In this document: positions 27,747-64,000 of the stretch, in pieces
Numbering within the stretch: the stretch's first letter is position 1
Layout: the number at the start of each line of letters is the position of its first letter
DNA from: Ruditapes philippinarum
Lineage: Eukaryota
Length of the DNA: 64,000 nt
Assembly: GCF_026571515.1 (NCBI RefSeq)
Contig: NW_026855269.1
Location: 62,001-126,000 of the forward strand
Direction of reading: 5' to 3'
Program-made: the position numbers and the translations under genes
Notes under the pieces: model-generated
Databases searched by the model: none
The model's input: only the letters and a program-made list of their open reading frames with translations
Told to the model about the DNA's origin: nothing

Positions 27747-28412
27747 CTATTTTTGCATATTCATCGATTTCTTCCTTTTAATTGACATTTTGCTTAAATA
27801 TTTTGTTGTCGAAACAACATGTCCAACTGTTTTAACTGATCTCTTTATACTATGTTTCTTTACTCGAACTTGAACAGTTTTTACCTGATCCGCTGTGTAA
27901 GTATCCTTTTCTAACGATTCTTTTGTATCGTTTTCGCTCATTTCATCTATTTCAGACGCTTGCCTGACAGGCATTTTTGAATTTGATTTTCTACTCTGTG
28001 TGCATGGAGATTTTTGTACAGGTACGACATCTAATTCGTTTTCGGATTCATGATCGTAGTCAGAATCAGTTTCAACTTTTGTATCTTTTGGCTTAAAAAG
28101 TTCCCTTAATTCATCGTTTATGATATTTTTTCGTATTACATTTTCACTTTCTGCCTCGACGTCCAATCTCTTTAAAGCTATCGGAGCTCTTGCGTGTCTT
28201 TTTATAAGATCGATGTCAATATGAATACCTTCGTTTCCTAGACGGGACACACGTCTTCGTTGTAATTCTTCTTGACGCTCTTTCAACGTTTCCAGTTTTT
28301 CTCGAAACCTTTTTTTCCTTTCATAGCTTTCGGCGTTTTGGACATCTAAAATACGTATTAATTCTTCTAATCGGAGGTTTGTCCGCAAGGCACTTTCATT
28401 TGCGTTAGCCAT
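27747..28412 (-). CDS. Uncharacterised 221-aa protein: N-terminal coiled coil, acidic/disordered middle, basic C-terminus
   Basis: Long ATG-initiated ORF in AT-rich DNA with charged heptads (RKKRFREKLETLKERQEELQRRR). A splice acceptor lies upstream at about 28479, and decayed paralogs lie at about 48.1-48.7 kb and 56.4 kb. Confidence 0.75.
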   Translation of the reverse strand: MANANESALRTNLRLEELIRILDVQNAESYERKKRFREKLETLKERQEELQRRRVSRLGNEGIHIDIDLIKRHARAPIALKRLDVEAESENVIRKNIINDELRELFKPKDTKVETDSDYDHESENELDVVPVQKSPCTQSRKSNSKMPVRQASEIDEMSENDTKESLEKDTYTADQVKTVQVRVKKHSIKRSVKTVGHVVSTTKYLSKMSIKRKKSMNMQK

Positions 28413-30569
28413 AACAAATCAATATTTGTTTTCATTCCGATCGAGTATACAACATACTCCTCAAAAATCCTAGTAAATCTGTAAAAAATACCACTTTTGA
28501 ACCTGATTATAAGAATAAATGATAAAAACGTAAAAGCAAAATTGATGCCGTGTCTTCCATCCTCTACTACTTATTTTATTTAAATATCAATTTTTCACTT
28601 ATGTCTATCTCTGTTGAAAAATCCTGTACCAGTATTACATGCAAGGAGACAGTGAATTAATATCCGCTGTTTTGTAGATTTTTTATTGCGTAGTTAATAG
28701 CTCATTAAAAGATCATAAAAGACCCGTGAAACCATGGCGATAGTAATCGAGGACATTAATTTCCTAGGTTGTATTACATGGCTATTTATGAATAATTAAA
28801 CATGATGGCACAAATGGAATATAATATTACTTCTGAAGATTATGTGATTGTTAATACAAATTGGAAAATAAATTCATTCCGTTGAAAATAATTATTTAAA
28901 TAACAAATTTGCGAAAGAGTAGAAATGTTAAACAAAATAATTTCATTTAGAAATGGATCCATTGCACTGTATGTACATCAAATTGATTAGTTTGATTTTA
29001 TCGGCCATATTCTTAACTGACTCGAAGCTTTCGTATGTTCCTTTTAAATAGTTTCGGCTATCTTAAAGTTTGTTATGTAGCCACCAGAATATCAATGGGA
29101 ATATTTTACTGTAGAAAAATAATCTGTATTTTGGTCAGAGTCTCTGACTTTGCATTTCAAATGAAATAGGAAAAAGGTTTTGTTGATGTCAGGCAATACG
29201 TGAACGTATCGTAAGAGATTTAGGTTTTGTATTAACAAATATATACAGTCTCCAGGCACATTTTCCATTTTAAAAACCAAAATAACAAATTGCATATGTA
29301 CCGTGACAATCGTTTATATTTGTGAGAGATTTCAAAGCGTCATTGGTGCACTAAGTACTAGTTATTGAAATTTTTTTTATTCTTATTTGTGTGCAAAGAT
29401 GAAGGTTTATTTGTAAAAAAAACTTTTAATTACTTTTCGATTATAATGCTTAATATAAAAACACAACGAACATAGTTTCCCTACCCAATTTTCGTACTGA
29501 ACCAGTCACACGTTACATTTTACAACAAATGAATTTCACATTATTTTGTATATATTGGTCTTCAAATGTCGAAAAATTACAAAAAAATGGTATATTATAA
29601 TATGTTTAAAAATCAAAACACGAAATTTCTATAAGAGTGATCTGAGATCAATATTGCCTCATAAGATTTCCTAGCATAGCAAAAAATAAGAAAAAAAGAT
29701 ACGCTCACCTTTCTTTAACGTTTTATTGCAATTTTATTTCTGTGCCCTATACGTCGTTTTAAGATTATTGATATGTTAGAGTAGTCTATATATACTTCGT
29801 CAATTATGCTTTATAAATAATAAAAGTTGTTTTATGAAATTTAAATCCTTTCAAAATGTATTAGCAAGTATAGATATTTCCAAATTCTTGTATGCTACAA
29901 ACAGGTTATTAATCAGCTCAATTCCGTTTACATTTTCTATCATAGAAATGTCATCTGGCTATAAATACACTAATTATCATACCTTTCGGTTGTAAAGTAT
30001 AAAAACATTTGACATTTATGGAAACTATGTACTTTAAATGAAATAAAATCCTAGCATAGCATAATTATGCAAAATTGCTTCGTAAACATTTTGAAATATG
30101 CAAACGAAATATGAATTAGACGTGTGATCTTTAATCTAAAGCTGAGAGCATTTATTACTCTATACTAAAAATAAATGCAATAGTAATCATAAAAGTAAGA
30201 AATTTTCATCATTAATCTAACATTATATATACACGATTTAGCATAAACGATTGAATGGGACATCTTAATTGCCAACTTTTACCATTTCCGCACTATTCAT
30301 GAAACATATATGCGTAATAGCTAATGAGATAATCATACGAAAACAATGTCCCCTGTCTAATCTTCATTTTAAATAGTTAAAACTTACCACTTTTTGAACT
30401 ATTTGTGCATCAAACATACGTTAAAAATAGATAAATGACGCTTAAAACATATTAAATCAACGTCCTTGTTGTATTTTCTAATTATTTTAAGTTTGAATGA
30501 TGTGTGTTTAATTAAGGAATTAAAATGAGGGTTGAATCGAAAGGACTTTTCAGGAATGCAATTTCAATG

Positions 30570-30620
30570 TGAATTATAACATTAGATTTGAATTGGATCT
30601 AACATAAGACAGAAGTACAG
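30570..30620 (+). promoter_or_regulatory. Conserved non-coding first exon of the type B genes (paralogs at about 36489-36540, 49932-49983, 57818-57869)
   Basis: gtgaattataac(a/t)ttagatttgaattggatc, or a close variant, followed by a gt(a/g)agt donor recurs upstream of all four type B ATG exons, each of which begins ag|ATG. Confidence 0.6.
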
Positions 30621-31194: not shown

Positions 31195-34100
31195 ATGTCG
31201 TGGTATTTGATTAGTTTGGTCATAAGCAGTACATTCGCATATGTTCATGGATGTTCATGTGTCCCATTTGATCCAGAGATAGATTACTGTGCTAGAACTT
31301 CAGGATTTGGTGCGTTTACACTTTTGTAGTCTTTTAAGAAGTTTTGTGATAAATGTTAACGATATAACATAGAGTAACGCCATCAGATTAATCTTTTTAA
31401 TTACAGAATTATATAAAGTTATTTTGCAAACTCAAGATTTTGTGCGTTCATACATATGTTTCTGTTTCAATGGTAAACTGCTTAGAATTTTTTAGTCTTG
31501 TGATATAGATTAACGATATATCATAAGGTAAATCAATATTAGATTATAATAATAACTTTCAGAACAATGTCCAATTTTTCTAAATGTGATACTGTGTAAG
31601 GTCTGTTGTGAATATGCGAAAATCAGAAACTCACCTTAGATCAACTACAAAGGCCTGGTTTAAAATTCGGTCCCATACATGTATAATGCTTCATTCAATA
31701 GTTTTAATATTTCTAAAACTACCAACATTTTTTTATTGCCATCAATACTTTATTATTTCAGCTGCTGTGTTTAAAATCAAAGATAATGGTACTGTTGTCG
31801 GTATACAACTGGCCTATGATGTTGATATCCTCTACAAATATGTATTTAAGGTAACTATCGTCTAGGCACTAATGTTATAAGAAGATTTTTTAAGAAAACG
31901 CTGAAAAGGGTCCATTCTAGCTAGAGGCTAGTGTCGAAAATCTCAAAAGTACCAGTATTGATATAATTCACAGACATTTGGGGTTTGGAGCTCAAAACGC
32001 CTTTAAAATCCAAATAAAATGCATATTTGTCAATCCCAGCACATGTACTGATCATATATATCAAAAAAACTTAATATAAGCCGTTTTGAAAAAAATTCAT
32101 ATTTCAACATCTATAATAATACACAAGATAAAAATGTTCGCCGGAAAAAATCCGCACCCCTACCGTCATAATCACCATGTATTTTAATCCATTTCCAATA
32201 TTTTCACATAATCCTTTGGTCCATCGACACAGAAGATATAATTCTTCACGATGATGGTCAATTTTAAACTTCAACGGTAATATAAACAACGCAACAGCCG
32301 AAATAAACATCAATATTATCGCCGTTTTTTTCCAACGACAAAATCTTTCGATAAATTTAATGGACCAGACGGCTATGAACGAAGCTATCCGATTATGTGG
32401 CCCCAGCTTTGCCGTGTGCAAAATGCGCAGCGCTTTTAAGTTTGGGAACCACATAATCGGATAGCTTCGTTCATAGCCGTCTGGTCCATTGAATTTATCG
32501 AAAGATTTTGTCGTTGGAAAAAAACGGCGATAATATTGATGTTTATTTCGGCTGTTGCGTTGTTTATATTACCGTTGAAGTTTAAAATTGACCATCATCG
32601 TGAAGAATTATATCTTCTGTGTCGATGGACCAAAGGATTATGTGAAAATATTGGAAATGGATTAAAATACATGGTGATTATGACGGTAGGGGTGCGGATT
32701 TTTTCCGGCGAACATTTTTATCTTGTGTATTATTATAGATGTTGAAATATGAATTTTTTTCAAAACGGCTTATATTAAGTTTTTTTGATATATATGATCA
32801 GTACATGTGCTGGGATTGACAAATATGCATTTTATTTGGATTTTAAAGGCGTTTTGAGCTCCAAACCCCAAATGTCTGTGATATAATTTACTTTCATTTC
32901 AAAGCAGATTCATTACAAATGCTAAAATGTAAGAAAATGATACTGTACATATAAAATCGAATTGTCAAAAACTATGTTTTCAAATTAATCTGAATATTGC
33001 TTCTAACAAATCGTTAAATACGTCTTAACTGTATACTGTAGCAATGCATGAGCGTAAACAATATTGGTTAGCTCAACGCAAAGGCTTATATTTAATAAAA
33101 GGATACCTTAAATCCGAATCTACAAGAATTGTTTCATTTTGTGTATACCAAACATTACTATAAAATAAAATATAAAGACAATTAACAGTAAGAAATGTGT
33201 AGTATTAACTAGAATTTATGCCTTTTATACTTGTTTCTTTTTGTATGTATGATACATTAATATATAATATAAAGACAATTAACTGTATTTTGTAAACTGG
33301 AATTGATGCTTAACATTACAAGAGCAAATGATAAAAATAAAGTATTCAACAAGCATTGTTTTCATGTCTGTCGCTTCAAGTTAATGATTTAGGAAGAAAA
33401 ATAAATCTATTTTGTAAGACAATTGTTATTTTTTGAAAACTTATTATTTAATTATTGTATTTTGTAATATTCATTACGTATCGGTGTATTATTATGGCCT
33501 AGGCTCCAAGTGAAAATGTAAAAACTGATAAACTGTATACAATGGTTGATGGACCTGCGTATGGGATTCGTTTACGTCCAGATAGTTTCTATATCATCAC
33601 AGGTAAGTCAAGGATAGGTGTTGTTAGTACTGGTTTTGTTGTTTACACGCATATATTTTCAATATTTTTAACATCATGACAGGCAAATAAAGGCAAGGTG
33701 TTATTAATTTTGAGCTTTTATTTTTAATTCTGGTATTACTTCATTACATGTTAGGAATGCGAAGCTTTCAATCGTTTAGATTGTTGACCCTTTTTTCTAA
33801 AATAAGTCTTCGTATATTTTGAGGTAGGTGTAACATAGAATGTTTCTTTTTAACTTGTAGGTGGAATATTTTATGCCATCTTAGTTATCTTAATTATTAT
33901 TACGAATGTAAGTTAATTATAATAATGATAATAATGGTACTGCATGCCCGTTTAAGTCAGTAGCATCTTTAAACATGACCATTACTTACTTCTTGTTATA
34001 GTTATAAAACTGTTTTTATACATGTATAAATAGTTATATATACAGCGTCATCAATTATTTGTTTATTGTTTGCTTTGTTTACAGGATATTTTCAACTAAG

Positions 34101-34230
34101 GGATGAAACACCTACGGTAATGACAACATCACGTTGTAGCACACAAGACTACTTCAAAGAGAATCCAATCGTTAGTGGTGACCCACCTCCGTGCGAGAGA
34201 TCTGATAAACATGTTGAATTTTCTGAATGA
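31195..34230 (+). CDS. Secreted single-domain TIMP/NTR-like protein, type B1 (149 aa). Exons 31195-31309, 31762-31850, 33503-33602, 34085-34230
   Basis: MSWYLISLVISSTFAYVHG-CSCVPFDPEIDYCARTSGF|AAVFKIK...YDVDILYKYVFK|APSENVKTDKLYTMVDGPAYGIRLRPDSFYIITG|YFQLRDETPTVMTTSRCSTQDYFKENPIVSGDPPPCERSDKHVEFSE*. GT-AG introns. The fourth Cys is replaced by Tyr. Confidence 0.87.
31969..32880. mobile_element. Foldback-type non-autonomous DNA transposon: 432-bp arms, 48-bp spacer, 8-bp TSD; P-superfamily-like termini
   Basis: Arms 31969-32400 and 32449-32880 are reverse complements with one mismatch (32358/32491). TSD atataatt at 31961-31968 and 32881-32888. Termini are CACAGAC...GTCTGTG. Confidence 0.93.
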
Positions 34231-35399: not shown

Positions 35400-35875
35400 T
35401 GACACCTTAATGTGAAAGTTTCGATAGTATAGTTTTCATCGGTTGCTGCTGATTACCGGTACATTTTGAACATGTAAACTCCGTGGGCAAAAAATCCTTG
35501 TATCTAAGACAGAGCTTTTCCAAATAAGGCTTTATATGGTTGGTATTACAGCTATACGCATGCGCAGCTACATAGTCAATACGACAGCCATTACATACAT
35601 GAAAGAACTCATCCAACCACTGAAAGTTATTATGTGCCGGGGTAGGACTTATGATTGGTTTTCCATTTATGTTTTCAATATACTTGCTGGGCAAACATGT
35701 TTATTTGGACAGCTTAGTCTGATTTGCTCAGAACTACAACATACTGCGCGGTGCTAAAAAATTTTCAATGGTATTGCTATTAGATTTCCAAATTAATGGA
35801 CGTTAATTCAGATATGTTTTGAAAGCAATGAGGACATTCCCGAACCGTAATCTGACGTTAGGTAGTTGTCAGTGA
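35400..35875 (-). pseudogene. Degenerate GH128 glucanase exon 2
   Basis: GKPIISPTPAHNNFQWLDEFFHVCNGCRIDYVAAHAYSCN aligns to the intact copies. It has deletions, IWLTEF is eroded to FLPTEF, the NEPD region is disrupted, and no intact exon 1 was seen. Confidence 0.85.
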
Positions 35876-37154: not shown

Positions 37155-39269
37155 ATGTCATGTTATTTAATTACCTTGGTCATCTGCAGTATGTTCTCAA
37201 ATGTTTCTGGGGTGTGTATCTGTGCTCTAGTTGATCCGGGGATAGATTACTGCAATTTCAATCCAGGATTCTGTACGTTTACAAATATGTTTTAGTTTGA
37301 ATTTGATTGTACTCAAAAGCTATTGTCTTGTGATTCAGGATGCATATAATGAACATTATTACTAGTTAACATAATATTATAAAAGTTTATTTTTAAAGTT
37401 TTAGCTATAAAACTCATAATCCTAAGATGGTCCGGAACGCATTTCGTTGTTCAATAACTAAAATAAGATTAACTACGAGGGACAGTTAAAAGTATTAATC
37501 TATGTGACGCTGTAATTAAGTGATCTTTCTGTGTAAAATTGTTAGTCCAACCCATCAAATTACCCACCCCCTCCCTCAACCACCCTTTAGCTCAATGCAA
37601 AAGCACGTCTCTTCTATCACCAATCCCGATATTATATAATAGTGTTTTCAGCCAGCATTCTTGACGCACTTCGCAAGCGTTCCCTGTTTTGGCCTTACAG
37701 TAGTAATATCACTTTCAGATGTTGCTGTTGCTGGACGAACAGATCAGGGTTCATTTTTGATATCTGTTTCCGGATTTGAATAGCCCGGCCCATCTTCTAG
37801 CAATGGCATATGGAATAACACTATTCCCATAAATATGTAGCAGAGAGCATAGCCTCTTCAAATCTAAACTGATTAATACTTTACAAACTCCCATTTGTAT
37901 TCGGTCCACAGGTAATTATATAATGCTTCGTTCATGAGCTTTGTATATTTCTTATATAAACTTATAGTCATATGCAATTTTTATTGTTTGTTATGATGGT
38001 TTGTGATTACTATCTTTACTTGCTTATTCTAGCTGCTGTATTTAAAATCAAAGGCAATGGTACTGTTGACGGTTCTCAGTTAGCTTATGATGTTGATATA
38101 CTTTACAAATACGCTTTTAAGGTAATTATCATATGTAATATAATACTAGGGAAAATATTTATACAACATTTAAAAGAAAATTGCAACAGCTAGTACATAG
38201 ATTATTTTTAATTTGTTGTTTTCATTTGTTTGCTTGTTTTGTTTTTGTTTGTTTGTTTAGGGCAGTGCTCACAATTTACTAAAGCATAAGGTAAAAGTAG
38301 TTTTAAAAGCCAGTAATGTAATAAGGAGGAATAAAATTTAACTAAAGCATGCAATAGCATTCCCCGGGTCCAAAACAATTCCATACAAATTCATATCGAA
38401 CTAATCTTATTTTTAAATCCAAACTCCCCATAACAAAGCAATATTGAATTGAATTCCGTCTGGCCTCGTGTTCATTTTCAGAGACTAAAAACCTATAATA
38501 TAAATAAATATATTTTATTAGGTAACCATAAAGTTTTTGTTGGGTATTTAATCATATATATACGTACAATAATTAAATGTACACTTTGATCATGTAATAT
38601 TATATGATCTAGGCTCCAAGTGGAAATGTGGAAACTGATAGATTGTATACATATGCTGATGTAGCTAACTGTGGAGTTCGCTTACGTCCAGATAGTTTCT
38701 ATATTATCACAGGTAAATAAAGGATAAATATTTTAAGTATTTTATTGGAGCGTAAATTGTAAATATAAATTTTACAAAATGGAAGATGTGCATATTTTAT
38801 TGTTTTTAAATATCTTATATTTTTGTTTTCAATCTATTCATGTTTTACTAGATATTATTTCATGTTCTCCTAGTCTAAGATAGATATTTAAGTAGGCAAA
38901 TTATCTCGTGCTATCATAAGATGTGTTAAAATCACATAATCATGTGACTATTGTCTGTCAAAAAATAATGATAATAATAAAGACATAAATCCTAATGCAA
39001 CAATAATTCTTTTTTATGTTCCATATCAGGATCAATCATTTCATGCAAAATTAACTTATTTTGATCAAAACTTACATATATTCAGTGTCATTAATACAGC
39101 CGTTTATTGTGTTGTTTTTTTAGGATATTTTGAAGTAAGACCTGACAATCCTGCTAAAATGAAAACGTCAGAGTGTCAAATATATGACTACTACAAAGAA
39201 AACCCGATTGAAAATGGTGATCCACCTTCGTGTGAGAGATCTGATGAATATGTTGAAATTTCTAATTGA
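37155..39269 (+). CDS. Secreted single-domain TIMP/NTR-like protein, type B2 (150 aa). Exons 37155-37272, 38033-38121, 38613-38712, 39124-39269
   Basis: MSCYLITLVICSMFSNVSG-VCICALVDPGIDYCNFNPGF|SAVFKIKGNG...|APSGNVETDRLYTYADVANCGVRLRPDSFYIITG|YFEVRPDNPAKMKTSECQIYDYYKENPIENGDPPSCERSDEYVEISN*. All six Cys present and GT-AG introns. Confidence 0.88.
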
Positions 39270-39992
39270 TCAAAATTATATCAAAACGGTAAATTGTAAA
39301 TGTTTCTACCTTCAGAAAGATATGTTTAGATGTTGTGATTCCAAGACATAATGTTCTTTTGCCTTATTTGAATCCTTTCTCCTCATTTCCTGCTTTTTAC
39401 GTTTCGCTTACATATTATGGAATATTAGGTAGTTTTTTCTTAAAAAACGTTAAGATATCGTTTCAGTTTTCTGAAAGGTCAGATTATTTTCTTAGAATTT
39501 GCAAAATCACAATATTCACGTAGAAACTGCATGGTTACTATGATCTCTAGAAACTTTAAGTTTCCAATACTCTCTTAAGGCCTCAACAGACGGTAGGATT
39601 TTGAAGTACAACACCAATTAAAACTAAGATGTACAAACAAATTTCAATGAGTGAAGGCTACTATTTCTTGATTTCGGAAACCTTAAGTCTAGATGTAAGG
39701 GATAGGACATGTTCTATTTTGAAAATCTTGTCGTACAGATTTTTACAGACCTCCCACAATGACAAGTAACAGATAACCAAATTATCTCCTGATAATGGGT
39801 GTAATGAATGAAATTCCAGAACAATTAGGGCTAAAAGGTAAACATAGTAGTAAGATGGGGTAAAAATGATGTTGAAAAACTCTTCAGGAGACCCAAAGTT
39901 GTGTTATGTTCGAATCCCAAATTATTCCGAAAATGATTATGTCACGGTATTGAATTGTTCTCTAATTAGGGGAGTGGAGGTAGTTTGTAGGC

Positions 39993-48085: not shown

Positions 48086-48682
48086 CATTTTTGTATATTC
48101 ATCGATGTTTGCCCTTTTATTGAAACATTTTTCTGTCGAACCAACATGTCCAATTGATTAAATTCATCTCTTTGTACCATGTGTCTGTACATACACTTGT
48201 ACGGTTAAATCCTTGTTGATGTATTATGTATATATGGATTTTTGTATCGTTTTCGCTTATCATCTATTTCAGGCGCTATCCTGGCATGTATCTTTGAAAG
48301 AGTTTCTTTGCTCAGTTTATTTTCACTTTGCTCAGGTTCGGCATTATATTAGTTTTTCCGATTCATAATCTTAGTATACTCTGTGGCTTTTATTTTAATA
48401 GTTCCATTGATTTATCGTTTATTATATTTTTCGAGTTGCATTTTCACTTTCTGCATTTCCGCTTCTTACACTTTAAATCACCAGGAGACTTGTATGACTT
48501 TGATTTGGTCGCTGTCAGTACTTAGACGGGGCACACGTCTCCTTTGTAATTTTCCTTGACATTCTTTTTTTTTTACCTTTTGTTTTCTTTCATAGGTTTT
48601 TGGCTTTTTGGACATCTCAAATACATATCAGTTCTTCCAGTCGCAGGTTTGTCCCAGAAGCATTTTTATTCTTGTAAGCTAT
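48086..48682 (-). pseudogene. Pseudogene paralog of the 221-aa ORF at 27747-28412
   Basis: Colinear similarity (atattcatcgat, caacatgtccaa, ttttgtatcgttttcgct, cattttcactttctgc, cacacgtct, tttggacatct). The ATG has become ATA and there are indels. Confidence 0.8.
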
Positions 48683-49069
48683 AACAAATTATTACAGATT
48701 TTCATTCCGAAATGTTTTGAAGCTCTGTTTTCATGAATCCACAACACCTGTATCTAAAACAATATCTACTTTTAACCTGATTATAAGAATAAATAGAGAA
48801 AAACGTTAATGTGAAATCGGACCCTTTTTAATTTCCTTCTAAAGCTTTCACTATTTTTAATCAAATACTAATGTTACCATAATGTCTATTTCTGTTGTAA
48901 ATTCCTGAACCATTATAACGTACAAGGAGACCGTGAATTAATATCCGCTGTTTTTCAGGTTTAATTGCGTAGTTAATAGATCATTAAGAGATCATAAAAG
49001 ACCCGTGAAACCATGGCGATAGTGAGCGAGACATTTATTTCCAAGGTTTTATAATGGTTATCTATGAAT

Positions 49070-50129: not shown

Positions 50130-50161
<32 letters not shown>

Positions 50162-53099: not shown

Positions 53100-56000
53100 T
53101 TAACCAACAATTTGTGACGAATGTCCAGTCCCATTAAAGTTATTGTAGTAATGTCCGATCATTGTGAGAGTGGAGGAATCATTGTGCAGAAGACTAGCAG
53201 CGGGAGTTATGAATCCACCATCAAATATTCGCTTAACTCTCGCCATAAACCATGAATACCTGCAATAATAAGATACGTTAGTTTTATTTCTTAATATTTA
53301 ATTATATGTGACATTGAAAAATCATCATAGTATTTATCGCTGTTACTCGGCTCGAACTTTTTGCGGTCCAACAAAATGTTATAGTTTCCACTAAGGAGGT
53401 CAATGTACTGTTTGTAGGACGGCTGTGGTCATCGTGAGTATCAAATTATTTAAAAGCTAACTGACACTTTTTTAATCTAGATGTAAAACGTTTGTATCAG
53501 GTATAATATTTAGGAAAAAGATAACAATTTTGATTTTATTTGTTTCCATATTGTACACGAGAATGCAAATCTTTTTCTCTGAATATAAAATTTCATTGCA
53601 ACGAGTAAGTGCTTAAATACATGTGTTATTATTTTTGCTCACAGAAAGAATTTGATAGTGAAGTCAAAAATGATAAATGTTCGTTTAAAAAATAAATCAA
53701 TTTCATTAACTCTCAATTTTGACCTTTGATTGCGACGATTTTAGGGTCATTTTCATAAGAAGAAGAAGAAATAGTTTATTTCGGTAACTTATACATGTAC
53801 AGTATCTCGTTACATACAATAATTACAAATATAATGATTCTGTGGTCACATGACAAAAGCAAAGAAAAAAATAATCAGAAGAACATAAAAAGTTTTAACT
53901 GATGACATTCTAACAGAGAACAGACAGCTGCAAATAAAGAAACAAAGAACATCACAATTTCATTATCATTCATAGAAATAAAAAGTTCCAGTAAGAAGAA
54001 AAACACCAAAAAAAACAAACAGAAAAGACGTGACAATAACATACATTTATTTGTTCTACTTTATTTACTGTCAAACCGTTTTGAGAATAACAATTACCTG
54101 ATAACAATTATAGATTGTTAAGAAAAAAAAAGAGAAAAAAATAAAAATCCCGATTGAATGTCCAAAACGTCAAAATTGAAACTGTTGTAGGCTCGGTTTG
54201 ACTAAGCCGGTTCAAGGACAGTATTGGAAAAGCAAGGTGTTTCTGCGCCCGATAGGACCGGTCCAAACAGAATTGAAACATGAAATGGTAAAATTTTGAG
54301 AAAAAAAAACATCCGCAGATGTGTTTGACAGAGTACTTATTACTTCATCGCCAAAGGTTCATGCATATGTTTTGTGATAAAATCAATTTACCTTTGTGAG
54401 TACAATGTAGTAATGGTAAAAACAATGTATTTGTCGAATGTTTCTTTATTGGATTCTATTATAGTTCACTAAAACTCATTTTTATTACCTTAGCACATAA
54501 GGTGCCGCCTCAAGTTTCGGTAACAGAGTTTTCATCAGATGCAGTTGTTGGTGTTCATCCGTAGATTTTGGACACGCAAACTCCGTGAGCCAAATTTCTT
54601 TATTGTATCTATGATACAGCTTTTCTAAATACGACATGATGTGATTGGCATTACAGCTATACGCATGCGCAGCTACATAATCAATACGACAGCCATTGCA
54701 TACACGAAAGAACTCATCCAACCACACAAAATTATGATGTGCCGGGGCAGGACTTAGGATTGGTTTTCCATGAGAGTGTTTTTCAATTTCTGGCCAAAGA
54801 TCAGCTACCTGTTGGGCAGACATATTTGTTTGGACGGCTTGGTCGGGTTCGTTCAAAACTAGTACATACGGTGCGTTGCTTGAAATATTCATGTGTATTG
54901 CGCCATTCCATCTAGATTTCCAAATCAGTGGAATGAATTCAGGCATGTACTGAAAAGAGTGAGGACATGCCTGAGTCACAGTCTGGTGGTAAGTAGTGAG
55001 GTCGTTTTTATAGTCATACCTGAAAGAAAAATCAAATAAACATGACGTGGTCCGCCCCTGTCTTGTATTTGTGAATTCACTTAATTGCCTACCATGGGTA
55101 ATGCATTACCTCCACTTTGAAGAGTATTCAAATAGAATATAGAATAGAATATATTGAAATTGAAGGGCGTGGGTTCAAACCCCAGTAGGGGCAACTTTTT
55201 TTTTTCTTTCTTTTTTTTCTTTTTAACATTATTTATGTATCTCTCTGATCCCTTGTGGAAGAAAAAAGGGTTTGATTTAAATTATATAATTATTGTAGGT
55301 ATTTATTCGCTAAATAATGCCAAAATTTATGGCAAATATGATACCAGATATTTTCAAAGTTTGATAAAATAAACACTTCACGGTAAAAGTATTTTATATT
55401 TCGCATGATCAACCAATATACCTTTAAAAAATTTAGGCAAACTTTGAAAACAGCCCCTTATTATGATAAATTTTAGGGATATTTTGAATAAGGCATTTTA
55501 GATAGGGAAATGGTAAAATTAGTGTTTAAAGTGGGTGGGGTAGAGTAACATTTTTATACATAATAAGAACATTTTGTTTAGAATCAAACATTTTGCTTGT
55601 GTAATTTGTAACCTGAATGTCATTATTTGTTTCTTAACAATGAGCAACAGAAAAACATTTTTTATAATGATGATATTACAGATTATTTAGAGTTTCCTCA
55701 TTTATGAAAATAAGCCCTTCTAATGGCAAAGTCTTAGTTCAGAAATATATCCATAACTCATAAACCGCACGGTAAATTTTATTTAAATTTTGCATACAGG
55801 TGACCTTGAAGACATATAACTGTCCTATGTTGTCAATTTTACAGTTCCTTGTGGTGCCCATTACCCATGGTCTACCTTTATCAAGAAACGAGAAAAAATG
55901 TACATAATCTACAAATAAAGAGGAAGTTAACAACGGACACTGTAATTATGTAGTCTGATGACACATTTACTAGTCAGAAAAAGATTGAATCTTCAATGTG

Positions 56001-56206
56001 AATGAAAATTTTTAAAAAAAAGAATAAATGATGTACAAATATAAAACATTTGCCTACCACCAAGCGATATTGTTAAGATTTTTGAAATCGTCACACAATA
56101 GTCCCGTAGCCCACGCAACGACGCCTTTCTTTTTAGATCCACATGTAAACCCTGCGTACAAAATTACGCTTAATGAACAAACTAGAAGAAACTTGTCCAT
56201 CGTCAT
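53100..56206 (-). CDS. Secreted GH128 putative beta-1,3-glucanase, copy 2 (279 aa). Exons 56206-56058, 55019-54489, 53259-53100
   Basis: Same exon sizes (149/531/160) as copy 1, with intact LNEPD and IWLTEF. Ends GHSSQIVG*. Confidence 0.9.
55091..55871. mobile_element. About 780-bp TIR element (MITE) in intron 1 of GH128 copy 2
   Basis: accatgggtaatg / cattacccatggt inverted ends. Its length accounts for the intron size difference (1038 versus 252 bp in copy 1). Confidence 0.6.
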
Positions 56207-56371
56207 TTCGTTTTTTGTTGTTGTTTTATTGTGAACTACACGTATATTCTATAATATCTTTATAACAAATGATAGTCCGAAAGAAACTTTAACAAACCGA
56301 TAAGACATGTCAAAAAACGAGTGCATGTCAGTGTAAGTGGCCAAATACATGAATAGATACCGTCGTTACAA

Positions 56372-56570
56372 AGACGGGACACACGTCTCAGTTATATTTC
56401 TTCTTGGCGTTTTTTTAACACTTTAATCTTTTTAAACGATTTCTTTCTTTCCTAGCTGTAGGCGTTTTGAACATTTCTTTTCTCAAGTTTCTTCACGTTC
56501 TAGGCTTGTCCTCGTACAAGTTTCATTTGTGTTAGGTATTATAAATCAGTATTTTATTCCGATCTTGTTT
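56372..56570 (-). pseudogene. 5' remnant of a third copy of the 221-aa ORF
   Basis: agacgggacacacgtct, ggcgttttgaacat, tttcatttgtgttag and attccgatc occur in the same order as in 28240-28442. Confidence 0.6.
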
Positions 56571-58497: not shown

Positions 58498-61400
58498 ATG
58501 TTATGTTATTTAGCTATCTTGGTCATAAGCAGCACTTTCTCATATGTTTGTGGTTGTACTTGTGCTCCATTCGATCCAGAGATAGATTATTGCGCACGAA
58601 CCTCGGGATTTGGTGCGTTTTCGTTTGAATTGAAATCTTCTTAGAAGTTATGGTCTTGTGGTATATCAACATATCGTTTTGTTTCGCTTGTTTTGTTAGT
58701 TTTTTCACTGATGTCTTTCCGATTTAGAAACAATTTTGTCATATCGATCCAACTCTTACTGGCTTTCTTAGATAACAGATAAGTTATTACCAATTTCTCC
58801 GTAAGTGACCGACTACAAATCCAACATAATTGGCGAGAGACAAATAGGCATTAGACTAAATTTTCGAAATCAGTTGTTATATTATAAGTCAAATAATAAC
58901 ATGGTGTACTTATGATCTGTAGCCGAAATACAAAGGTAAAAAGCCATAGTATTTATAATTTGTGGCTGAAATACAAAGCTAACACATCCATACGTTTTTA
59001 AGATACACCCAATCAAGACATTGGGGGACAATGGGGAACCTTAATATTAAAACGCATTATGTTTGAAGAGGTTCCTAATTATTTCTAATAATGTAACTTT
59101 TTCGTCACTTATATTACCTTTGTTTATTTACTTTTTATCACCAATTTTGTTTAAATTTGTATTTGTTATGCATGTAATTTTGACTTGCCGCAAAAATTGT
59201 ATTCATATCTGATTTTGCCACATGGGTCTAAGATATTCCGGGTGAAAAATAAATAAACGTATACATGTACTATCTAAAGCAAAATAATTATTGTTTGTAA
59301 TGGCCTTCATTTCTTGATTATTTTAGCTGCTGTGTTTAAAATCAAAGGCAATGGTACTGTAGAAGGGTTTCAACTTGCCTATAATGTTGATATACTTTAC
59401 AAGTACGTTTTTGAGGTAATAATCATTTTCAATAAAAATGTTATGAGAAAATATATACATGCACAATTTAATTATATAAAGCATTGAGGTGTCTATTATA
59501 TCTATAGTGTTGTAAATATTTCACTCTTAATTTTATTGAGTTTCCTGTTGGAGCAGTTCCATTTCAAATGCAGGGAGTAAGAAGAAATAAAAAGTAAGCG
59601 TACTCTAAAGGAGAAAACAATGGGCGGAAATAAAATATATTTATGTGTAAATCAATTCTGTTTTATGTCCAGACAAAATAACGAATTTACTTGGTACAAA
59701 AAATTCAAAGAAAGTATTACGTTTTCAATTATAAGGTCATAAAATTTGGAATTGTTCTAAATGTTCTATTGTGTTCCAGGCTCCTGGTGAAACTGTGAAC
59801 ATAGATCAGTTATTTACTGCTACATCTGGATCTATGTGTGGAATTCGCTTACGTCCAGATAGTTTCTATATCATCACGGGTAAATGAAGATTTTTTTTTG
59901 AACATTTGAATTATACCACATCAAAGATAAAGAGGATATTGAATAAGTGTAGGTTCAGTACTGAATTTATTGAACAAGTTGAATATAGTTATATCACGCA
60001 AGCCTCTGGCGACTATAATATTACTTAAAAGAATAAGTTCAATAAAAATTTAGTAATGAACCTTCACGAATATAATATTTTATTTATCACATATCATCCA
60101 AAATAACAACTGTTACTACGGTGAAAAGAAATGGCTAAGAACGCACTTAAATTGCAACGTTAACATGCAGCGCGTCTTTATATGTTTGTATAATGCAAAT
60201 GACCACTTTAAAACATATGAACTTCGACTATAATATTACTTTACAGAATGGGTTCAATGAATTTAGTAATGAACCTTCAAGGATATAATATTTTATTTAT
60301 CACATATCATCCAAAATAACAACTGTTACTACGGTGTAAAGAAATGGCTTAGAACGCACTTATAGTGCAACGTTAACATTCAGCGCGTCTTTATATGTTT
60401 CTACAATGCAAATGACCTTACGTTAAAATATATGCACGGCCGTGCAATGCCATTTTACGGAGCCGCAGAAGCGGCAAGGATATGTGATAAATAACGATAT
60501 GAGAGTGAAACAAATGTGTGTGTGTTTTTTGTATATCATATAAATATACATTAGTAATGAACCTAAAATGACATTATGCAACAACATATCAATACAATTT
60601 TTCTGAATGCGAAGCTTTCAAAATAATATTTAGATCTCTCTTTCTATGCCAAGCATAGAAGTTGGTATCTCCTACGTAGAAGTTATCCTTTTTATAGAAC
60701 TTTATAAATTGGCACCAGTACGCACGCAGTCGTTTATACCTTTTGTTTTACATACGCTGTATCATCAATACAATCGTTTAAACCTTTTGTTTTACATACG
60801 TTGTGTCGTTAATACAGCCGTTTATTCTTTTTGTTTTACATATGTTGTGCCGTCAACAAAGTCGTTTATGCCTTTTGTTTAACATACGTTGTGCCATTTA
60901 TACAGTCGCTCATACCTTTTGTTTTACATACGTTGTGCCGTCAATACAGATTTTTTGTTTTGCATATGTTGTGCCGTCAATAAAGTCGTTTATACCTTTT
61001 GTTTACATACGATGTTCATCAATGAAGCGGTTTAAACCTTTTGTTTTACATACGTTGTGTCATTTATACAGTAGATTAAACCTTTTGTTTTACATACGTT
61101 GTGTCATTTATACTTAAAAGGTTGTCTATACCTTTTGTTTTACATACGTTGTATCATTAATGAAGCCGTTTAAACCTTTTGTTTTACATACGTTGTATCA
61201 TCAATGAAGCCGTTTAAATCTTTGTTTTACATATGTTGTGTCATGTATACAGTCGTTTAAACCTTTTGTTTTACATACGTTGTATCATCAATGAAGCCGT
61301 TTAAACCTTTTGTTTTACATACGTTGTGTCATTTATACAGTCGTTAAACCTTTTGTTTTACATAGGTTGTATCATCAATGAAGTCGTTTAAATATCTTGT

Positions 61401-61674
61401 TTTACATACGTTGTCTCATTTATTCAGTCGTCTATACCTTTTGTTTTACATATGTTGTGTCGTCAGCTTTTGTTTAACATACGTTGTGTCATCAATAAAG
61501 TCGTTTATATCTTTTGTTTGTTTTACAGGATATTTTGAAGTAAGACCCGATAAGCCTGCAAAAATGGTAACTGCACTATGTTACACACAAGACTACTTCA
61601 AAGAGAGTCCTGTCGTAAATGGTGACCCACCGCCGTGCGAGAGATCTGACAAATATGTTGAATTTTCTGAATGA
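58498..61674 (+). CDS. Secreted single-domain TIMP/NTR-like protein, type B4 (149 aa). Exons 58498-58612, 59327-59415, 59780-59879, 61529-61674
   Basis: MLCYLAILVISSTFSYVCG-CTCAPFDPEIDYCARTSGF|AAVFKIKGNG...|APGETVNIDQLFTATSGSMCGIRLRPDSFYIITG|YFEVRPDKPAKMVTALCYTQDYFKESPVVNGDPPPCERSDKYVEFSE*. Canonical CTC start and six Cys. Confidence 0.9.
59950..60495. mobile_element. Intronic insertion with an internal tandem duplication of about 215 bp and inverted motifs
   Basis: cgactataat...aatgcaaatgacc occurs at about 60010 and 60226. atttatcacatatc and gatatgtgataaat are inverted copies. Confidence 0.5.
60725..61520 (+). repeat. About 44-bp minisatellite (about 18 units) abutting the exon-4 acceptor of B4
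   Basis: Unit ttttacatacgttgt(a/g)tcat(caatgaa/ttataca)g(c/t)cgtttaaaccttttg. Confidence 0.92.
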
Positions 61675-62310
61675 TGAATATAATACATTTGTAGCACTGC
61701 ATTAAAAAGTAAAATATTATACTCGTATGCCTTCAATACACTTATATATAAAAATATATTATAGATATTGATTTTAGTCTAATAAAACCATTAAGATCAT
61801 TTTTTAGCAATTTGATTGCTTTCATTTTTTAGCAATTTGATTGCTTTCCGATGAAGCGATGTTTCGGCGCAGTCCGGTGCCTTTCAGTCTTTGTATGCAT
61901 AGAATAGAAGTATTTAGAGCAGGTATTTGTAGATAATCAAAATCCGTCAAGAAATAACCAATGTATGCCAAAAAGTGTAGGTTTATAAGTGCCTCGGAGT
62001 GTATATAGTATACGTCAAAAAAATATTTTTTTATAAAATATGGTCCAGTGACCTACATCGTCCAAATTCTTATAATAAACACTATATTTCACTGTTTTTA
62101 CACATTGTTTTTTAAGCTCTATCATGAAATTATTGTTACAGGTTTATTGGCAAAAGCTATCTACAAAAAGTCATCAAAACGTATCATGCTTTCACTGGCC
62201 TATGCAATGTTGATTAAGTATGATTGTTATACGAACAGCAAGTGTTTGCAAATATTTTCATCTTGTGGGTAGATTTCAAATACCGAAGATATTGCCTTAC
62301 GAAACTGTTT

Positions 62311-64000
62311 TCATTGGTTGAACAAAGAGATTTCTTCTTCTATTAAATCTTTAAGTTCATCGATACAGTCATCATCCTTGTTTTCAAGTAGATTTACGGT
62401 CGGATTGAAATACTCCCCTATGTGTCGTTTATGTAGACGATGTGCAAACTCTTGTAAAAAGTTCAGATAGCGGTTGGCTAGTTCTTCTTTGTACCAGTAT
62501 TCATCCTTTGGTAAAATTTCACACAGCCACAAAAGTGTTGTCTGAAAGTCAAATTTATGTCCTACATATAATATTATGTATTAAATTGTATATGAATCAC
62601 ATTTTATGTTTATCAAAAATGCTGATAAGAATAAGTAAAGATTGTTTGAATTTATCTTGTATGTAATCTTACAGACCGATGTTGACATGTAGAAAGAGAC
62701 GAAGAACCAGATTTAAAAAAACTAAATACCTTTAATAGGTACGAGGAAATTTCTTTTAATCCGGTCGATTTTGACTTCCATTGCATCAACTTCTTTTTCA
62801 TAATTCTAAGGCATGCCTTGCGCCACGTGTTTGCGTCATCAATATCTCTCAAAAGTTCATTTTCGCAGTTTGCATACGAAATTTTCCAGTATTTATCTCC
62901 TTTAGGCACCAAATATATCTGCTGACATTTCACAATGTCTATTTTTTCTTTCGTGAGCCACTTTTTAGTGTCGCGTCTTGGCCACCCAAAGTCTGTGACA
63001 CTTATTATCTCATTTGATAAGGTTAATTTTGGAGTTATATCTACGGAAATATTTGGCCCGTCGTCCTGTTGGATTGTCAGCGTTACAGCCGGACCTCTAG
63101 CACCACGGTTTAAACTAACTGCATCAAGTCCTGAAATTTACATTTTTGGTATGCAAAGAATGGATAATAACAGTGGAAAATGAAAGAAATTTGGGGGACA
63201 TTTGTTCTGGTTGAAATAAATATACGATATGTTTACAATTTGAGCACTTCAGATATGCCATATGAACTTTTTACACAAGTGACGATTATGTAACCACTTA
63301 CGCTATCAGAATAAAGTAAACATACCATACACAGCATTATTGACAAAGTCGTGAAACTCGGACAGGAGATAGTATGGCAAAATCATCGTCCGTTTTCTAT
63401 CCGGTACACAGCAATTTGGAAATCTTGAATTAACCCGCCGAGAAACATAAACAGCTTTAAAGCCATCAGGCACGTAGGGTTCGTTAGGGTTTGGACGTAA
63501 GGATCTCCTCTCATTTGGAAAATATCGCTTCCCTGTGTGTACGAAGGTCGATGGAATCTAGTATAGTAATGAATTATTAGCGTTTAAAACTTCAGCATAT
63601 GAGTGTAAATTTCTTTTGGATAAATGAATATAGATATGAAGAAGAATTAAAGTAACAGCTTATTAATTTGTTTACAAACTTAATGGAAATGCATTAATCA
63701 ATAAGTTCGGAGAAAAACTGAATTTTTTTTTTATCATAAATCAATTGAACAAATCTAAAATGAAAATGACAGTTTAAAAATGTATTACGTTTACTTTATT
63801 TCTATCATGACTGTCAATGTCATCCCATTCGAATTCGAAGTCAACCGGCTCATCACTTAGTTCTAGTTCTTGACAATTGATTAGGATATCAACACTATAG
63901 TCTAACTCTTCTGCTTTTCCTACTTTTACTCCAACAGCATATGAACCTTCGGTGGTAGCCTCCTTTGAAAAACGAGCTCTGTTTTCTCTTTTATTTAGAA
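62311..64000 (-). CDS. cGAS-like receptor (Mab-21 family nucleotidyltransferase, cGLR), 5' end beyond the window. Exons >64000-63795 (or 63789), 63557-63326, 63130-62730, 62541-62311
   Basis: EGSYAVGVKVGKAEELDY (GS...ExD), GPAVTL...ISVDITP (third acidic residue), WP...W, LVPK, WKISY...E, SSYLLK|TTLLW and YFNPTVNLL are Mab-21/cGAS motifs. Splice phases are consistent and there are no internal stops. Confidence 0.9.

What the first reader, a model, noticed from the sequence alone, without database searches (positions are those of the whole stretch)
27747..64000. Co-duplicated cassette of TIMP-like inhibitor plus GH128 beta-1,3-glucanase, ending at a cGAS-like receptor: candidate secreted defence cluster
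Seen: the order [orphan ORF(-), TIMP-B(+), GH128(-)] repeats. Unit 1 is 27.7-35.9 kb with the GH dead. Unit 2 is 36-47 kb with the orphan missing. Unit 3 is 48-56.2 kb with the orphan dead. Unit 4 is 56.4-61.7 kb, where a cGLR occupies the tail-to-tail slot of the GH. The orphan decays in every extra copy, while four TIMP-B and two GH128 frames stay open despite diverged introns. Known: TIMP N-domains inhibit metzincin metalloproteases, GH128 enzymes cleave beta-1,3-glucan (fungal, oomycete and algal polymers), and cGLRs make cyclic dinucleotides for STING. Inference: a co-regulated mucosal, digestive or haemolymph module that degrades glucan-walled microbes while blocking proteases. Passive co-duplication of neighbours is the null model.
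Basis: partly seen in the sequence, partly recalled or inferred. Interest (0 to 1): 0.8.

Follow-up and report, generated by a model that had tools for sequence, protein, structure and literature searches.

The report
Co-duplicated TIMP-like and GH128 clam genes
A stretch of a clam genome carries four tandem copies of a small TIMP-like gene interleaved with copies of a GH128 glucanase gene and ends at a cGAS-like gene, and the best reading is neighbouring genes copied together by chance rather than a purpose-built defence module.

Summary
Window 27.7-64 kb (Ruditapes philippinarum contig C3756) has four collinear, diverged units.

- **TIMP-B genes:** four 4-exon genes are open, with canonical splice sites in all copies.
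- **GH128 genes:** two 3-exon PF11790 genes are intact and one is a wreck.
- **Orphan ORF:** one 221-aa ORF is intact, plus two decayed copies.
- **Right end:** a Mab-21/cGAS-like gene lies tail-to-tail with TIMP-B4 and runs past the window end.

The family calls hold. A family profile hits N-TIMP-3 at 2e-14, and the AF2 model matches TIMP N-domains. GH128 scores 155 bits and aligns with solved GH128 structures through the NEP and TEF motifs. Coding exons are under purifying selection (dN/dS 0.13 for GH128, 0.2-0.55 for TIMP-B), while intron flanks are near random. TIMP-B3 and GH128-3 are spliced and transcribed.

The "co-regulated defence module" is not supported.

- PF11790 matches 30 places on 14 contigs and TIMP-like exons lie on 11 contigs. 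Only C3756 and its near-copy C5593 carry both.
- Two other GH128 arrays contain no TIMP exon.
- On C5307, TIMP-B duplicates with the cGLR and without GH128.
- In Mercenaria the retrieved relatives lie on different chromosomes.

The parts
27747..28412 (-). Orphan ORF, 221 aa, Lys/Glu/Arg/Ser-rich, intact only here
   Evidence: No homologue among 1688 candidates, no Pfam family, no Atlas hit. In the clam's own genome only itself plus one remnant.
31195..34230 (+). TIMP-B1, 4 exons (31195-31309, 31762-31850, 33503-33602, 34085-34230). Product equals NCBI LOC132742696 (P0002). Tyr replaces the conserved Cys of the CG motif.
35416..35866 (-). GH128 pseudogene remnant (exon 2 only, with stops, a deletion and a frame change)
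   Evidence: PF11790 at 1.2e-12 on a 95-aa piece. tblastn with P0003 shows stops. No match to exons 1 or 3.
37155..39269 (+). TIMP-B2, 4 exons (37155-37272, 38033-38121, 38613-38712, 39124-39269). N-terminal motif is C-I-C-A-L.
45111..47031 (-). GH128-2, 3 exons (47031-46883, 46630-46100, 45270-45111), open frame, canonical splice sites
   Evidence: PF11790 at 1.9e-36
48088..49069 (-). Decayed copy of the orphan region (many stops)
50324..52671 (+). TIMP-B3, 4 exons (50324-50438, 50631-50719, 51247-51346, 52526-52671). Spliced transcript seen.
   Evidence: GT..AG joints 50717>51245 and 51342>52522 in run X3.
53100..56206 (-). GH128-3, 3 exons (56206-56058, 55019-54489, 53259-53100). Spliced transcript seen.
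   Evidence: PF11790 at 5.3e-36. CT..AC joints 53256>54486 and 55016>56055 in run X3.
56353..56475 (-). Short remnant of the orphan ORF (2 stops)
58498..61674 (+). TIMP-B4, 4 exons (58498-58612, 59327-59415, 59780-59879, 61529-61674). Carries all six conserved Cys and the C-T-C-A-P motif. A 44-bp x 17 tandem repeat lies in intron 3.
62314..64000 (-). Mab-21/cGAS-like gene. Coding pieces lie within 62314-62580, 62655-63137, 63309-63557 and from 63777 on. It continues to about 64562, beyond the window.

Best explanation
This is the right-hand end of a tandem array of small secreted single-domain TIMP-like genes in the Manila clam.

**Origin (inferred).** One member of a separately expanded, secreted GH128 beta-1,3-glucanase family came to lie tail-to-tail beside a TIMP-B gene. 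Unequal crossing-over or segmental duplication then copied the whole block [orphan ORF, TIMP-B, GH128] several times. The array stops where the next unrelated gene, a cGAS-like receptor, begins.

**After duplication (shown).** Each gene followed its own fate.
- TIMP-B and two GH128 copies are kept by purifying selection and are transcribed.
- One GH128 copy and two orphan copies have decayed.

**Functions (inferred from family).**
- TIMP-B proteins are extracellular metalloprotease-inhibitor-like proteins.
- GH128 proteins are secreted retaining beta-1,3-glucanases. Their substrate could be dietary laminarin-type glucans or microbial walls.
- The cGLR is an intracellular nucleotidyltransferase sensor.

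The genes share a duplication history, not a demonstrated joint mechanism.
For: **Duplication.** Collinear blocks at 67-89% identity. Units 1 and 3 share the orphan, all TIMP-B exons and GH128. The smallest TIMP-B dS is B1-B3 at 0.25.

**Selection.**
- GH128-2 vs GH128-3: dN/dS 0.13 over 277 codons.
- Six TIMP-B pairs: dN/dS 0.21-0.55 over 147 codons.
- Exons are 68-94% identical while intron flanks are 50-68%, against about 52-58% for shuffles.

**Independent fates.** The GH128-1 remnant has stops and the orphan copies carry stops.

**Linkage is local.**
- PF11790: 30 places on 14 contigs.
- TIMP-B exon-4 profile: 7 places, 4 of them in the window, 2 on C5307 and 1 on C5593.
- TIMP-family profile: 66 exon matches on 11 contigs.
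- The contigs carrying both are C3756 and C5593 only. C5593 is a reverse-collinear copy of unit 3 (75-96% identity by block).
- In 38 kb from two other GH128 arrays (C853, C7860; four GH128 genes), 27 TIMP-like queries gave no hit better than E 0.11. The same queries gave 147 hits at 1e-3 in the window.
- C5307 carries two [TIMP-B4-like + cGLR] blocks and no GH128.

**Other species.** Eight Mercenaria TIMP-like proteins (seven clusters) lie on a 73,516,942-bp chromosome and one on a 75,806-bp scaffold. The five Mercenaria GH128 relatives retrieved lie on sequences of 85,987,162, 120,499,105 (three proteins) and 82,914,371 bp.

**Families.**

**Transcription.** Spliced contigs for both unit-3 genes in run X3.

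**Literature.** Tandem duplication as the driver of bivalve TIMP expansion, and 11 'pseudo TIMPs' in M. mercenaria, are in print (PMC10755359, passages read). Radiation of cGLR genes in bivalves, to more than 200 cGLR proteins in a single genome, is in print (PMC9980059, passages read).
Against: - Retention of intact TIMP-B beside intact GH128 in two units (three counting C5593) is also what a selected pair would show.
- The window's GH128 sub-lineage (window copies plus C5593) is always next to a TIMP-B, so within that sub-lineage the linkage is complete.
- GH128-n and TIMP-B(n+1) are head-to-head, 2.3-3.3 kb apart, and could share regulatory DNA.
- Both unit-3 genes are transcribed in the same sample (X3).
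- The whole-genome searches give lower bounds, and contigs are short (C5593 is 23 kb).
- The Mercenaria test rests on the contig-length field for only those homologues that the word-based search returned.
Confidence: 0.75

Rival explanations
1. One reading: the cassette is a co-regulated secreted defence or digestive module. GH128 attacks glucan-walled microbes while TIMP-B blocks microbial or host metalloproteases, and the cGLR belongs to the same immune neighbourhood. Selection favoured copying the pair together.
For: - Both frames are kept under purifying selection in units 2 and 3.
- Both unit-3 genes are spliced and transcribed in one sample.
- All copies of this GH128 sub-lineage found (window and C5593) sit next to a TIMP-B.
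- All three families are ones expanded in bivalves, two of them with immune literature.
Against: - 12 of the 14 GH128-bearing contigs show no TIMP-like exon, and 9 of the 11 TIMP-bearing contigs show no GH128.
- A direct look at four other GH128 genes found none.
- Unit 1 lost its GH128 while keeping TIMP-B.
- TIMP-B4-type genes duplicate with the cGLR instead.
- The Mercenaria relatives retrieved are on different chromosomes.
- The cGLR is not secreted.
- Three of the four TIMP-B copies depart from canonical inhibitor features: B1 lacks a disulfide Cys, B2 has Ile at position 2 and no Pro at position 5, and B3 has Glu just before Cys1.
Confidence: 0.1
2. A young, lineage-specific partnership. 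Linkage is not ancestral, but in venerid clams the head-to-head GH128(n)/TIMP-B(n+1) pairs now share a bidirectional control region. The block is amplified for dosage of both products.
For: - Divergent orientation with 2.3-3.3 kb between first exons.
- The upstream blocks 46715-47116 and 55896-56316 are conserved at 75%.
- Both genes are transcribed in X3.
Against: - The conserved upstream block covers the GH128 first exon and its near flank, and nothing shows a shared element.
- Depth on the exons of both genes is low in one raw RNA run and absent in the other (X21 about 1-6x; X23 zero).
- The decayed orphan copy lies in the space between the two genes in unit 3.
Confidence: 0.1
3. Assembly artefact: the 'units' are mis-joined haplotypes or collapsed and expanded repeats rather than true tandem copies.
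For: The assembly is fragmented (15,874 contigs). C5593 and part of C5307 look like alternative haplotypes or recent copies of parts of this locus.
Against: - The units differ by 10-30% in exons and are nearly unalignable in introns.
- Intron lengths differ, and the units differ in content: a dead GH128, a missing orphan, and about 5.8 kb between TIMP-B2 and GH128-2 against about 0.4 kb in unit 3.
- Haplotype duplicates would be far more alike.
- The RNA contigs match unit 3 specifically, with 0-6 differing letters per piece.
Confidence: 0.03

Closest known systems
Bivalve TIMP / 'pseudo-TIMP' tandem expansions (PMC10755359)
   Same: - Small secreted proteins with signal peptide, C-x-C-x-P start, six Cys and an NTR/OB fold.
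- Expanded by tandem duplication.
- Many copies too diverged for domain databases.
- The paper reports 11 'pseudo TIMPs' in the venerid M. mercenaria (passages read).
   Different: - TIMP-B is below Pfam's TIMP cut-off (17.5 vs 23.1 bits for P0001; no hit for P0002).
- It has 4 exons, whereas 132 of 142 molluscan TIMP genes in that paper have five.
- It has no C-terminal TIMP domain.
- It is interleaved with an unrelated enzyme gene.
- Ruditapes does not occur in the paper's main text (0 occurrences). Its supplements could not be seen.
GH128 beta-1,3-glucanases of bacteria and fungi (solved structures 6UAX, 6UAQ and others)
   Same: PF11790 at 154.9 bits over profile positions 13-237. The best solved relative scores 4.5e-24, and the NEP and LTEF motifs align.
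   Different: - This is an animal, intron-containing gene that belongs to a family with at least 30 matches in the clam genome.
- The characterised mollusc beta-1,3-glucanases named in PMC7551256 are GH16 (passages read).
- No paper describing a molluscan GH128 was found.
Animal cGAS-like receptors (cGLRs), radiated in bivalves (PMC9980059)
   Same: Mab-21 NTase core plus C-terminal helix bundle. The best solved relatives are cGAS and cGLR1, with 'PAVTL...ISVDI' aligned.
   Different: - The position defined as [QT] before GS is Glu here.
- The spacing of the motif parts cannot be measured without a spliced model.
- About 230 polar residues precede the core.
- No activity or ligand is known.
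Tandemly duplicated immune or digestive gene families of bivalves in general (C1qDC, IAP, I84 inhibitors)
   Same: Lineage-specific tandem arrays, pseudogenised copies among intact ones, and candidate haplotype variants on other contigs (not resolved from paralogues). This rests on the search listing only.
   Different: Here two unrelated families alternate within one array, which is less usual than a pure array.

Membership tests
TIMP / NTR (PF00965, N-terminal inhibitory domain) | Sequence match to the family model above the curated cut-off | tested here: not met
   P0001 scores 17.5 bits against a cut-off of 23.1 (E 0.0038), and P0002 has no hit. At family level, 16 of 18 aligned relatives match PF00965 at E <= 0.01 (best 1.5e-13) and 8 of 18 match NTR. 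The profile of the 18 hits N-TIMP-3 at 2.2e-14, and all 15 listed chains are TIMPs.
TIMP / NTR (PF00965, N-terminal inhibitory domain) | OB-type beta-barrel fold of N-TIMP | tested here: met
   AF2 model of P0001 with an 18-sequence alignment: pLDDT 81.8, pTM 0.73. All 17 Foldseek PDB chains listed above rank 19 are TIMP-1/2/3 chains, best 2j0t_D at E 1.3e-6 and TM 0.68 normalised by target.
TIMP / NTR (PF00965, N-terminal inhibitory domain) | Mature N-terminus Cys1-x-Cys3 directly after the signal peptide, with six Cys forming three disulfides | tested here: inconclusive
   - HMMER aligns query residue 22 (first Cys of C-T-C) with residue 1 of mature TIMPs.
- B3 and B4 have all six Cys.
- B1 has Tyr for the 'CG' Cys.
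- B2 has C-I-C-A-L.
- The signal cleavage site was not predicted because no tool was available. The requirement for a free Cys1 is recalled knowledge.
TIMP / NTR (PF00965, N-terminal inhibitory domain) | Inhibition of metzincin metalloproteases | not testable with these tools
   Needs recombinant protein and protease assays.
GH128 (PF11790, Glyco_hydro_cc) | Match to the family model above the cut-off over the whole catalytic core | tested here: met
   Window exon-2 ORFs score 1.9e-36 and 5.3e-36. The full NCBI model P0003, which is 94% identical to GH128-3 exon 2, scores 154.9 bits against a cut-off of 21 over profile positions 13-237.
GH128 (PF11790, Glyco_hydro_cc) | Two catalytic glutamates (NEP and TEF motifs of clan GH-A; their roles are recalled, not from a call) | tested here: met
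   'LNEPD' and 'WLTEFAC' are present in GH128-2 and GH128-3 and align with the same motifs of solved GH128 6UAX and 6UAQ. The NEP region is destroyed in the unit-1 remnant.
GH128 (PF11790, Glyco_hydro_cc) | beta-1,3-glucan hydrolysis | not testable with these tools
   Needs laminarin or curdlan assays.
cGAS-like receptor (cGLR) | Mab-21 NTase core plus C-terminal helix bundle | tested here: met
   PF03281 at 1.9e-10 and PF20266 at 3.1e-13 on separate exon pieces. The closest solved chains are cGAS and cGLR1.
cGAS-like receptor (cGLR) | Active-site motif h[QT]GS [X8-20] [DE]h[DE]h [X50-90] h[DE]h (PMC9980059) | tested here: inconclusive
   - Read by eye..T-E-G-S, then 11 residues, then E-L-D-Y in the first coding exon, and V-D-I in the third.
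- Glu stands where Q/T is required.
- The 50-90 spacing cannot be measured without joining exons, which was left out.
- phmmer of the first-exon piece found no cGAS chain.
Functionally linked gene cluster (co-regulated module) | Linkage conserved across paralogous loci and across species | tested here: not met
   Only 2 contigs carry both families, against 14 with GH128 and 11 with TIMP-like exons. No TIMP exon lies in two other GH128 arrays. The Mercenaria relatives retrieved are on different chromosomes.
Functionally linked gene cluster (co-regulated module) | Co-expression by tissue or challenge | not testable with these tools
   Run metadata are coded. Only presence of spliced transcripts of both genes in X3 was shown, with low depth in X21 and none in X23.

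The most novel reading that the evidence does not exclude
A venerid-specific sub-lineage of animal GH128 glucanases has been captured inside a TIMP-like array and is being co-amplified with it under selection. The head-to-head GH128/TIMP-B pairs would act as a shared regulatory unit next to a cGLR. That would be a nascent eukaryotic 'defence island' in which a glucan-degrading enzyme, a protease inhibitor and a nucleic-acid sensor are inherited, and vary in copy number, as one block.
Probability: 0.1. Interest if true: 0.6.

Novelty: new member of a known kind. Interest (0 to 1): 0.3.

Why it matters
The case shows how bivalve genomes build alternating arrays of unrelated secreted-protein genes by segmental duplication. 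A neat repeated gene order need not signal a functional module.

The most useful by-product is an unreported fact. The Manila clam carries a large, clustered, intron-containing GH128 (PF11790) family with at least 30 matches, and relatives exist in Mercenaria, Mya and the limpet Patella. The characterised mollusc beta-1,3-glucanases named in the one paper read on them (PMC7551256) are GH16.

If these enzymes digest laminarin-type glucans of microalgae or attack fungal or oomycete walls, they matter for clam nutrition or disease resistance. The diverged single-domain TIMP-like genes add to the known 'pseudo-TIMP' expansion of heteroconch bivalves.

Tried and rejected
**Pfam TIMP exon by exon.** The whole-genome PF00965 search found none of the window's TIMP-B exons. 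It was too weak on single exons, so I used profiles built from window exons (A1) and from database relatives (A2) instead.

**Orphan ORF.** No Pfam family, no homologue (only proteins of about 121-387 aa were eligible), no Atlas hit. It is unexplained. It could be an exon of a longer unannotated gene.

**Haplotig or paralogue for C5307 and C5593.** A DNA search of the clam's own genome with window 10000-27700 returned only dispersed repeats and not even the window itself. The question is left open.

**Intron comparison by BLASTN.** Introns cut out alone gave almost no alignments. I replaced this with global alignment of intron flanks against shuffles.

**Run X1.** Its contigs cover intron and intergenic DNA, and its RNA label is a guess. 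It is not used as evidence of transcription.

**Literature.**
- Searches were too broad to be informative.
- 'GH128' gave 139 papers. All but one of the 25 listed concern fungi or bacteria; the other is on rice cultivars.
- 'GH128' plus 'mollus' gave 4 papers, none describing a molluscan GH128 (passages of PMC7551256 read).
- 'Glyco_hydro_cc' or 'PF11790' gave 11 papers, none on animals.
- 'Ruditapes philippinarum' plus 'metalloproteinase inhibitor' gave 6 papers, none on this locus by title (listing only).
- Subscription journals and supplementary files were not searchable, so 'not in print' holds for these searches only.

**Earlier findings of the scan.** Nothing was shown.

**Horizontal-transfer origin of molluscan GH128.** Considered but not tested.

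Full report
**Where we are.** The window is G000:C3756:62001-126000 of a 1.41-Gb, 15,874-contig assembly. The NCBI protein LOC132742696 of Ruditapes philippinarum (P0002) is identical to the four TIMP-B1 exons apart from read-through at exon edges. It is recorded on a contig of 151,295 bp, which is the length of C3756. The DNA is AT-rich, with GC 0.28-0.34. I take the organism to be the Manila clam.

**Observation.** Self-BLASTN shows collinear repeated blocks from 27.7 kb to 61.7 kb. The orphan region 27749-28793 matches 48087-49069 (70%), and part of it matches 56357-56587. Blocks around each TIMP-B exon recur in all four units. The GH128 main exon recurs three times. Instead I laid database proteins on the window.

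- **TIMP-B genes.** P0001 and P0002 give four exons in each of four TIMP-B genes: 31195-34230, 37155-39269, 50324-52671 and 58498-61674, all on the plus strand.
- **GH128 genes.** P0003 gives three exons in each of two GH128 genes (47031-45111 and 56206-53100, minus strand). It also gives one exon-2 wreck at 35866-35416 with stops, a deletion and a frame change.
- **Splice sites.** Every predicted intron has GT..AG and every gene ends in a stop codon.
- **Orphan ORF.** The 221-aa ORF is open only at 27747-28412. About 0.003 frames of that length are expected by chance in the window. The unit-3 copy is riddled with stops, the unit-4 remnant has two stops, and unit 2 has no copy.
- **Right end.** The Mab-21 gene lies tail-to-tail with TIMP-B4 and runs out of the window. 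Its first coding exon ends near 64562.

**What the genes are: TIMP-B.** The protein is about 150 aa. It has a hydrophobic N-terminus, then C-[ST]-C-x-P, a third Cys ten residues later, a 'CG' Cys in exon 3 and two Cys in exon 4.

- On its own it is below Pfam's TIMP cut-off: 17.5 vs 23.1 bits for P0001 and nothing for P0002.
- The exhaustive phmmer search found 24 representatives at E <= 0.001.
- Eighteen of them aligned (A2) give a profile that hits N-TIMP-3 at 2.2e-14. All 15 listed chains are TIMPs, aligned from mature residue 1.
- 16 of the 18 members match PF00965 at E <= 0.01, and 8 of 18 match NTR.
- The AF2 model (pLDDT 81.8) has TIMP-1/2/3 chains for all 17 Foldseek chains listed above rank 19.

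It is therefore a single-domain N-TIMP-fold protein with no C-terminal TIMP domain. The copies are not equivalent.

- B1 has Tyr where 17 of 18 family members have the 'CG' Cys.
- B2 reads C-I-C-A-L.
- B3 has Glu directly before Cys1, which by the recalled -1 rule is a poor signal-peptidase site.
- Only B4 shows every canonical feature.

**What the genes are: GH128.** The exon-2 ORFs match PF11790 at 1.9e-36 and 5.3e-36. The full NCBI model P0003, encoded on C5593, scores 154.9 bits over profile positions 13-237. Its best solved relatives are GH128 structures (6UAX at 4.5e-24), with the NEP and LTEF motifs aligned. Both motifs are intact in GH128-2 and GH128-3. Homologues found are from Ruditapes, Mercenaria, Mya and the limpet Patella, plus unnamed environmental sequences. 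That is 20 proteins at E <= 0.001 out of 26 candidates.

**What the genes are: cGLR.** The exon pieces match Mab-21 (1.9e-10) and Mab-21_C (3.1e-13). The best solved relatives of the third piece are cGAS chains and a cGLR1, with 'PAVTL...ISVDI' aligned. The motif published for cGLRs (PMC9980059, passages read) is partly visible by eye: GS, then 11 residues, then E-L-D-Y, and later V-D-I. However, Glu stands at the [QT] position, and the spacing cannot be measured without a spliced model. I therefore call it a Mab-21/cGAS-like gene and a probable cGLR.

**Selection and expression.** I summed Nei-Gojobori counts exon by exon, without joining.

- GH128-2 vs GH128-3: dN 0.043, dS 0.324, ratio 0.13 over 277 codons.
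- Six TIMP-B pairs: ratios 0.21-0.55, with dS from 0.25 (B1-B3) to 0.80 (B1-B4) over 147 codons.
- Exons are 68-94% identical. Intron flanks of 100-150 nt are 50-68% identical, hardly above shuffled controls at 52-58%.

The frames are therefore kept by selection.

In run X3 (Logan contigs) there are spliced pieces with exactly the predicted joints. For TIMP-B3 they are 50717>51245 and 51342>52522 (GT..AG, depth 7). For GH128-3 they are 53256>54486 and 55016>56055 (CT..AC, depth 18-21). Each piece differs from the window by 0-6 letters. In raw RNA run X21, with about 4% of the run read, exon depth is about 1-6x. In X23 it is zero. The very deep bins 51295-52090 and 55076-55871 are intronic repeats. 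Tissue and treatment are coded, so co-expression could not be judged.

**Is the pairing a module? Within the genome.**

- PF11790 matches 30 places on 14 contigs, mostly in arrays: C853 x4, C7860 x5, C2909 x5 and others.
- The TIMP-B exon-4 profile matches only 7 places: 4 in the window, 2 on C5307 and 1 on C5593.
- The broad TIMP-family profile matches 66 exon-sized places on 11 contigs.
- Only C3756 and C5593 appear in both lists.
- C5593 (23 kb) is a reverse-collinear copy of unit 3 and the start of unit 4, at 75-96% identity by block. It is either an alternative haplotype or a very recent copy.
- I fetched 38 kb from two other GH128 arrays holding four genes. 27 TIMP-like queries found nothing better than E 0.11, while the same queries gave 147 hits at 1e-3 in the window.
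- C5307 carries two TIMP-B4-like genes. The second is followed tail-to-tail by a cGLR copy as in the window. Two more cGLR-like copies in the opposite orientation lie between the two genes. There is no GH128.

So whichever gene happens to lie beside a TIMP-B gets copied with it.

**Is the pairing a module? Across species.**

- Eight Mercenaria TIMP-like proteins (seven clusters) are recorded on a 73,516,942-bp chromosome and one on a 75,806-bp scaffold.
- The five Mercenaria GH128 relatives retrieved are on sequences of 85,987,162 bp (one), 120,499,105 bp (three) and 82,914,371 bp (one).
No eukaryotic genome other than G000 is reachable.

**Context.** The window's left part holds more TIMP-like genes.

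- A gene at 12132-13868 equals LOC132742695 (P0029).
- A broken copy lies at 16524-16991.
- Another copy lies at 19781-22983.
- A minus-strand fragment lies at 24857-25078.

The locus is therefore first of all a TIMP-like array. GH128 is the guest.

**Verdict.** The functional inference of a co-regulated secreted defence cluster is not supported.

Points that leave room for a young, lineage-specific partnership:
- This GH128 sub-lineage is always linked to a TIMP-B.
- The GH128(n)/TIMP-B(n+1) pairs are head-to-head.
- Both unit-3 genes are transcribed in one sample.

**Comparison with what is known.** Tandem TIMP expansion and 'pseudo-TIMPs' in bivalves (PMC10755359, passages read) and the radiation of cGLRs in bivalves (PMC9980059, passages read) are in print. 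A large GH128 family in a mollusc was not found in the searchable literature. That is the most reportable by-product. Supplementary files, which may list such genes, were closed.

**Score.** Interest is 0.3. This is a tidy, real structure with an ordinary origin and a modest new fact about animal GH128 genes.

Noticed in passing
window 12132-25078: More TIMP-like genes lie upstream of the finding. One at 12132-13868 (+) is identical to NCBI LOC132742695 (P0029). A broken copy with an in-frame stop lies at 16524-16991. Another copy lies at 19781-22983 (+), and a minus-strand fragment at 24857-25078. The whole window is a TIMP-like array.
   Followed up: partly
G000 contigs C853, C7860, C2909, C5488, C10008, C6812 and others: PF11790/GH128 is a large clustered family in this clam, with 30 matches on 14 contigs (a lower bound). 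The arrays have genes about 8-9 kb apart and share the same three-exon layout. No paper describing a molluscan GH128 was found. A horizontal origin was not tested.
   Followed up: partly
L003-L007 (G000:C5307:8001-58000): This stretch holds two TIMP-B4-like genes. A cGLR copy lies downstream of the second, collinear with window 56.7-64 kb at 80-91%. Two further cGLR-like copies in the opposite orientation lie at about C5307:32.9-36.6 kb. Whether this is a haplotype or a paralogue is undecided.
   Followed up: partly
window 60727-61465 and 60010-60434: A 44-bp unit repeated about 17 times and a 213-bp unit repeated twice lie inside intron 3 of TIMP-B4. The repeats create several spurious ORFs of 78-104 aa.
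   Followed up: no
window 390-1782, 4066-5406, 7123-8277: Satellite-like tandem arrays with periods of 143-145, 155-156 and 171-181 bp.
   Followed up: no
window 51295-52090 and 55076-55871: These intronic stretches have very high RNA and contig depth (hundreds to thousands) and many partly fitting reads. They look like dispersed, transcribed repeats inside TIMP-B3 intron 3 and GH128-3 intron 1.
   Followed up: no
window 39270-45110: TIMP-B2 and GH128-2 are about 5.8 kb apart, against about 0.4 kb between stop codons in unit 3. The extra DNA holds ORFs of 81-98 aa with no Pfam match. It may be an insertion.
   Followed up: partly
L008 1777-2673 (window 63777 to about 64673): The cGLR's first coding exon begins with about 230 polar, Lys/Asn/Ser-rich residues before the GS...ELD core. 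Their function is unknown.
   Followed up: no
window 18-260: An 80-aa ORF has a weak zf-RVT match (E 4e-4, below the cut-off). It is probably a retroelement fragment.
   Followed up: no
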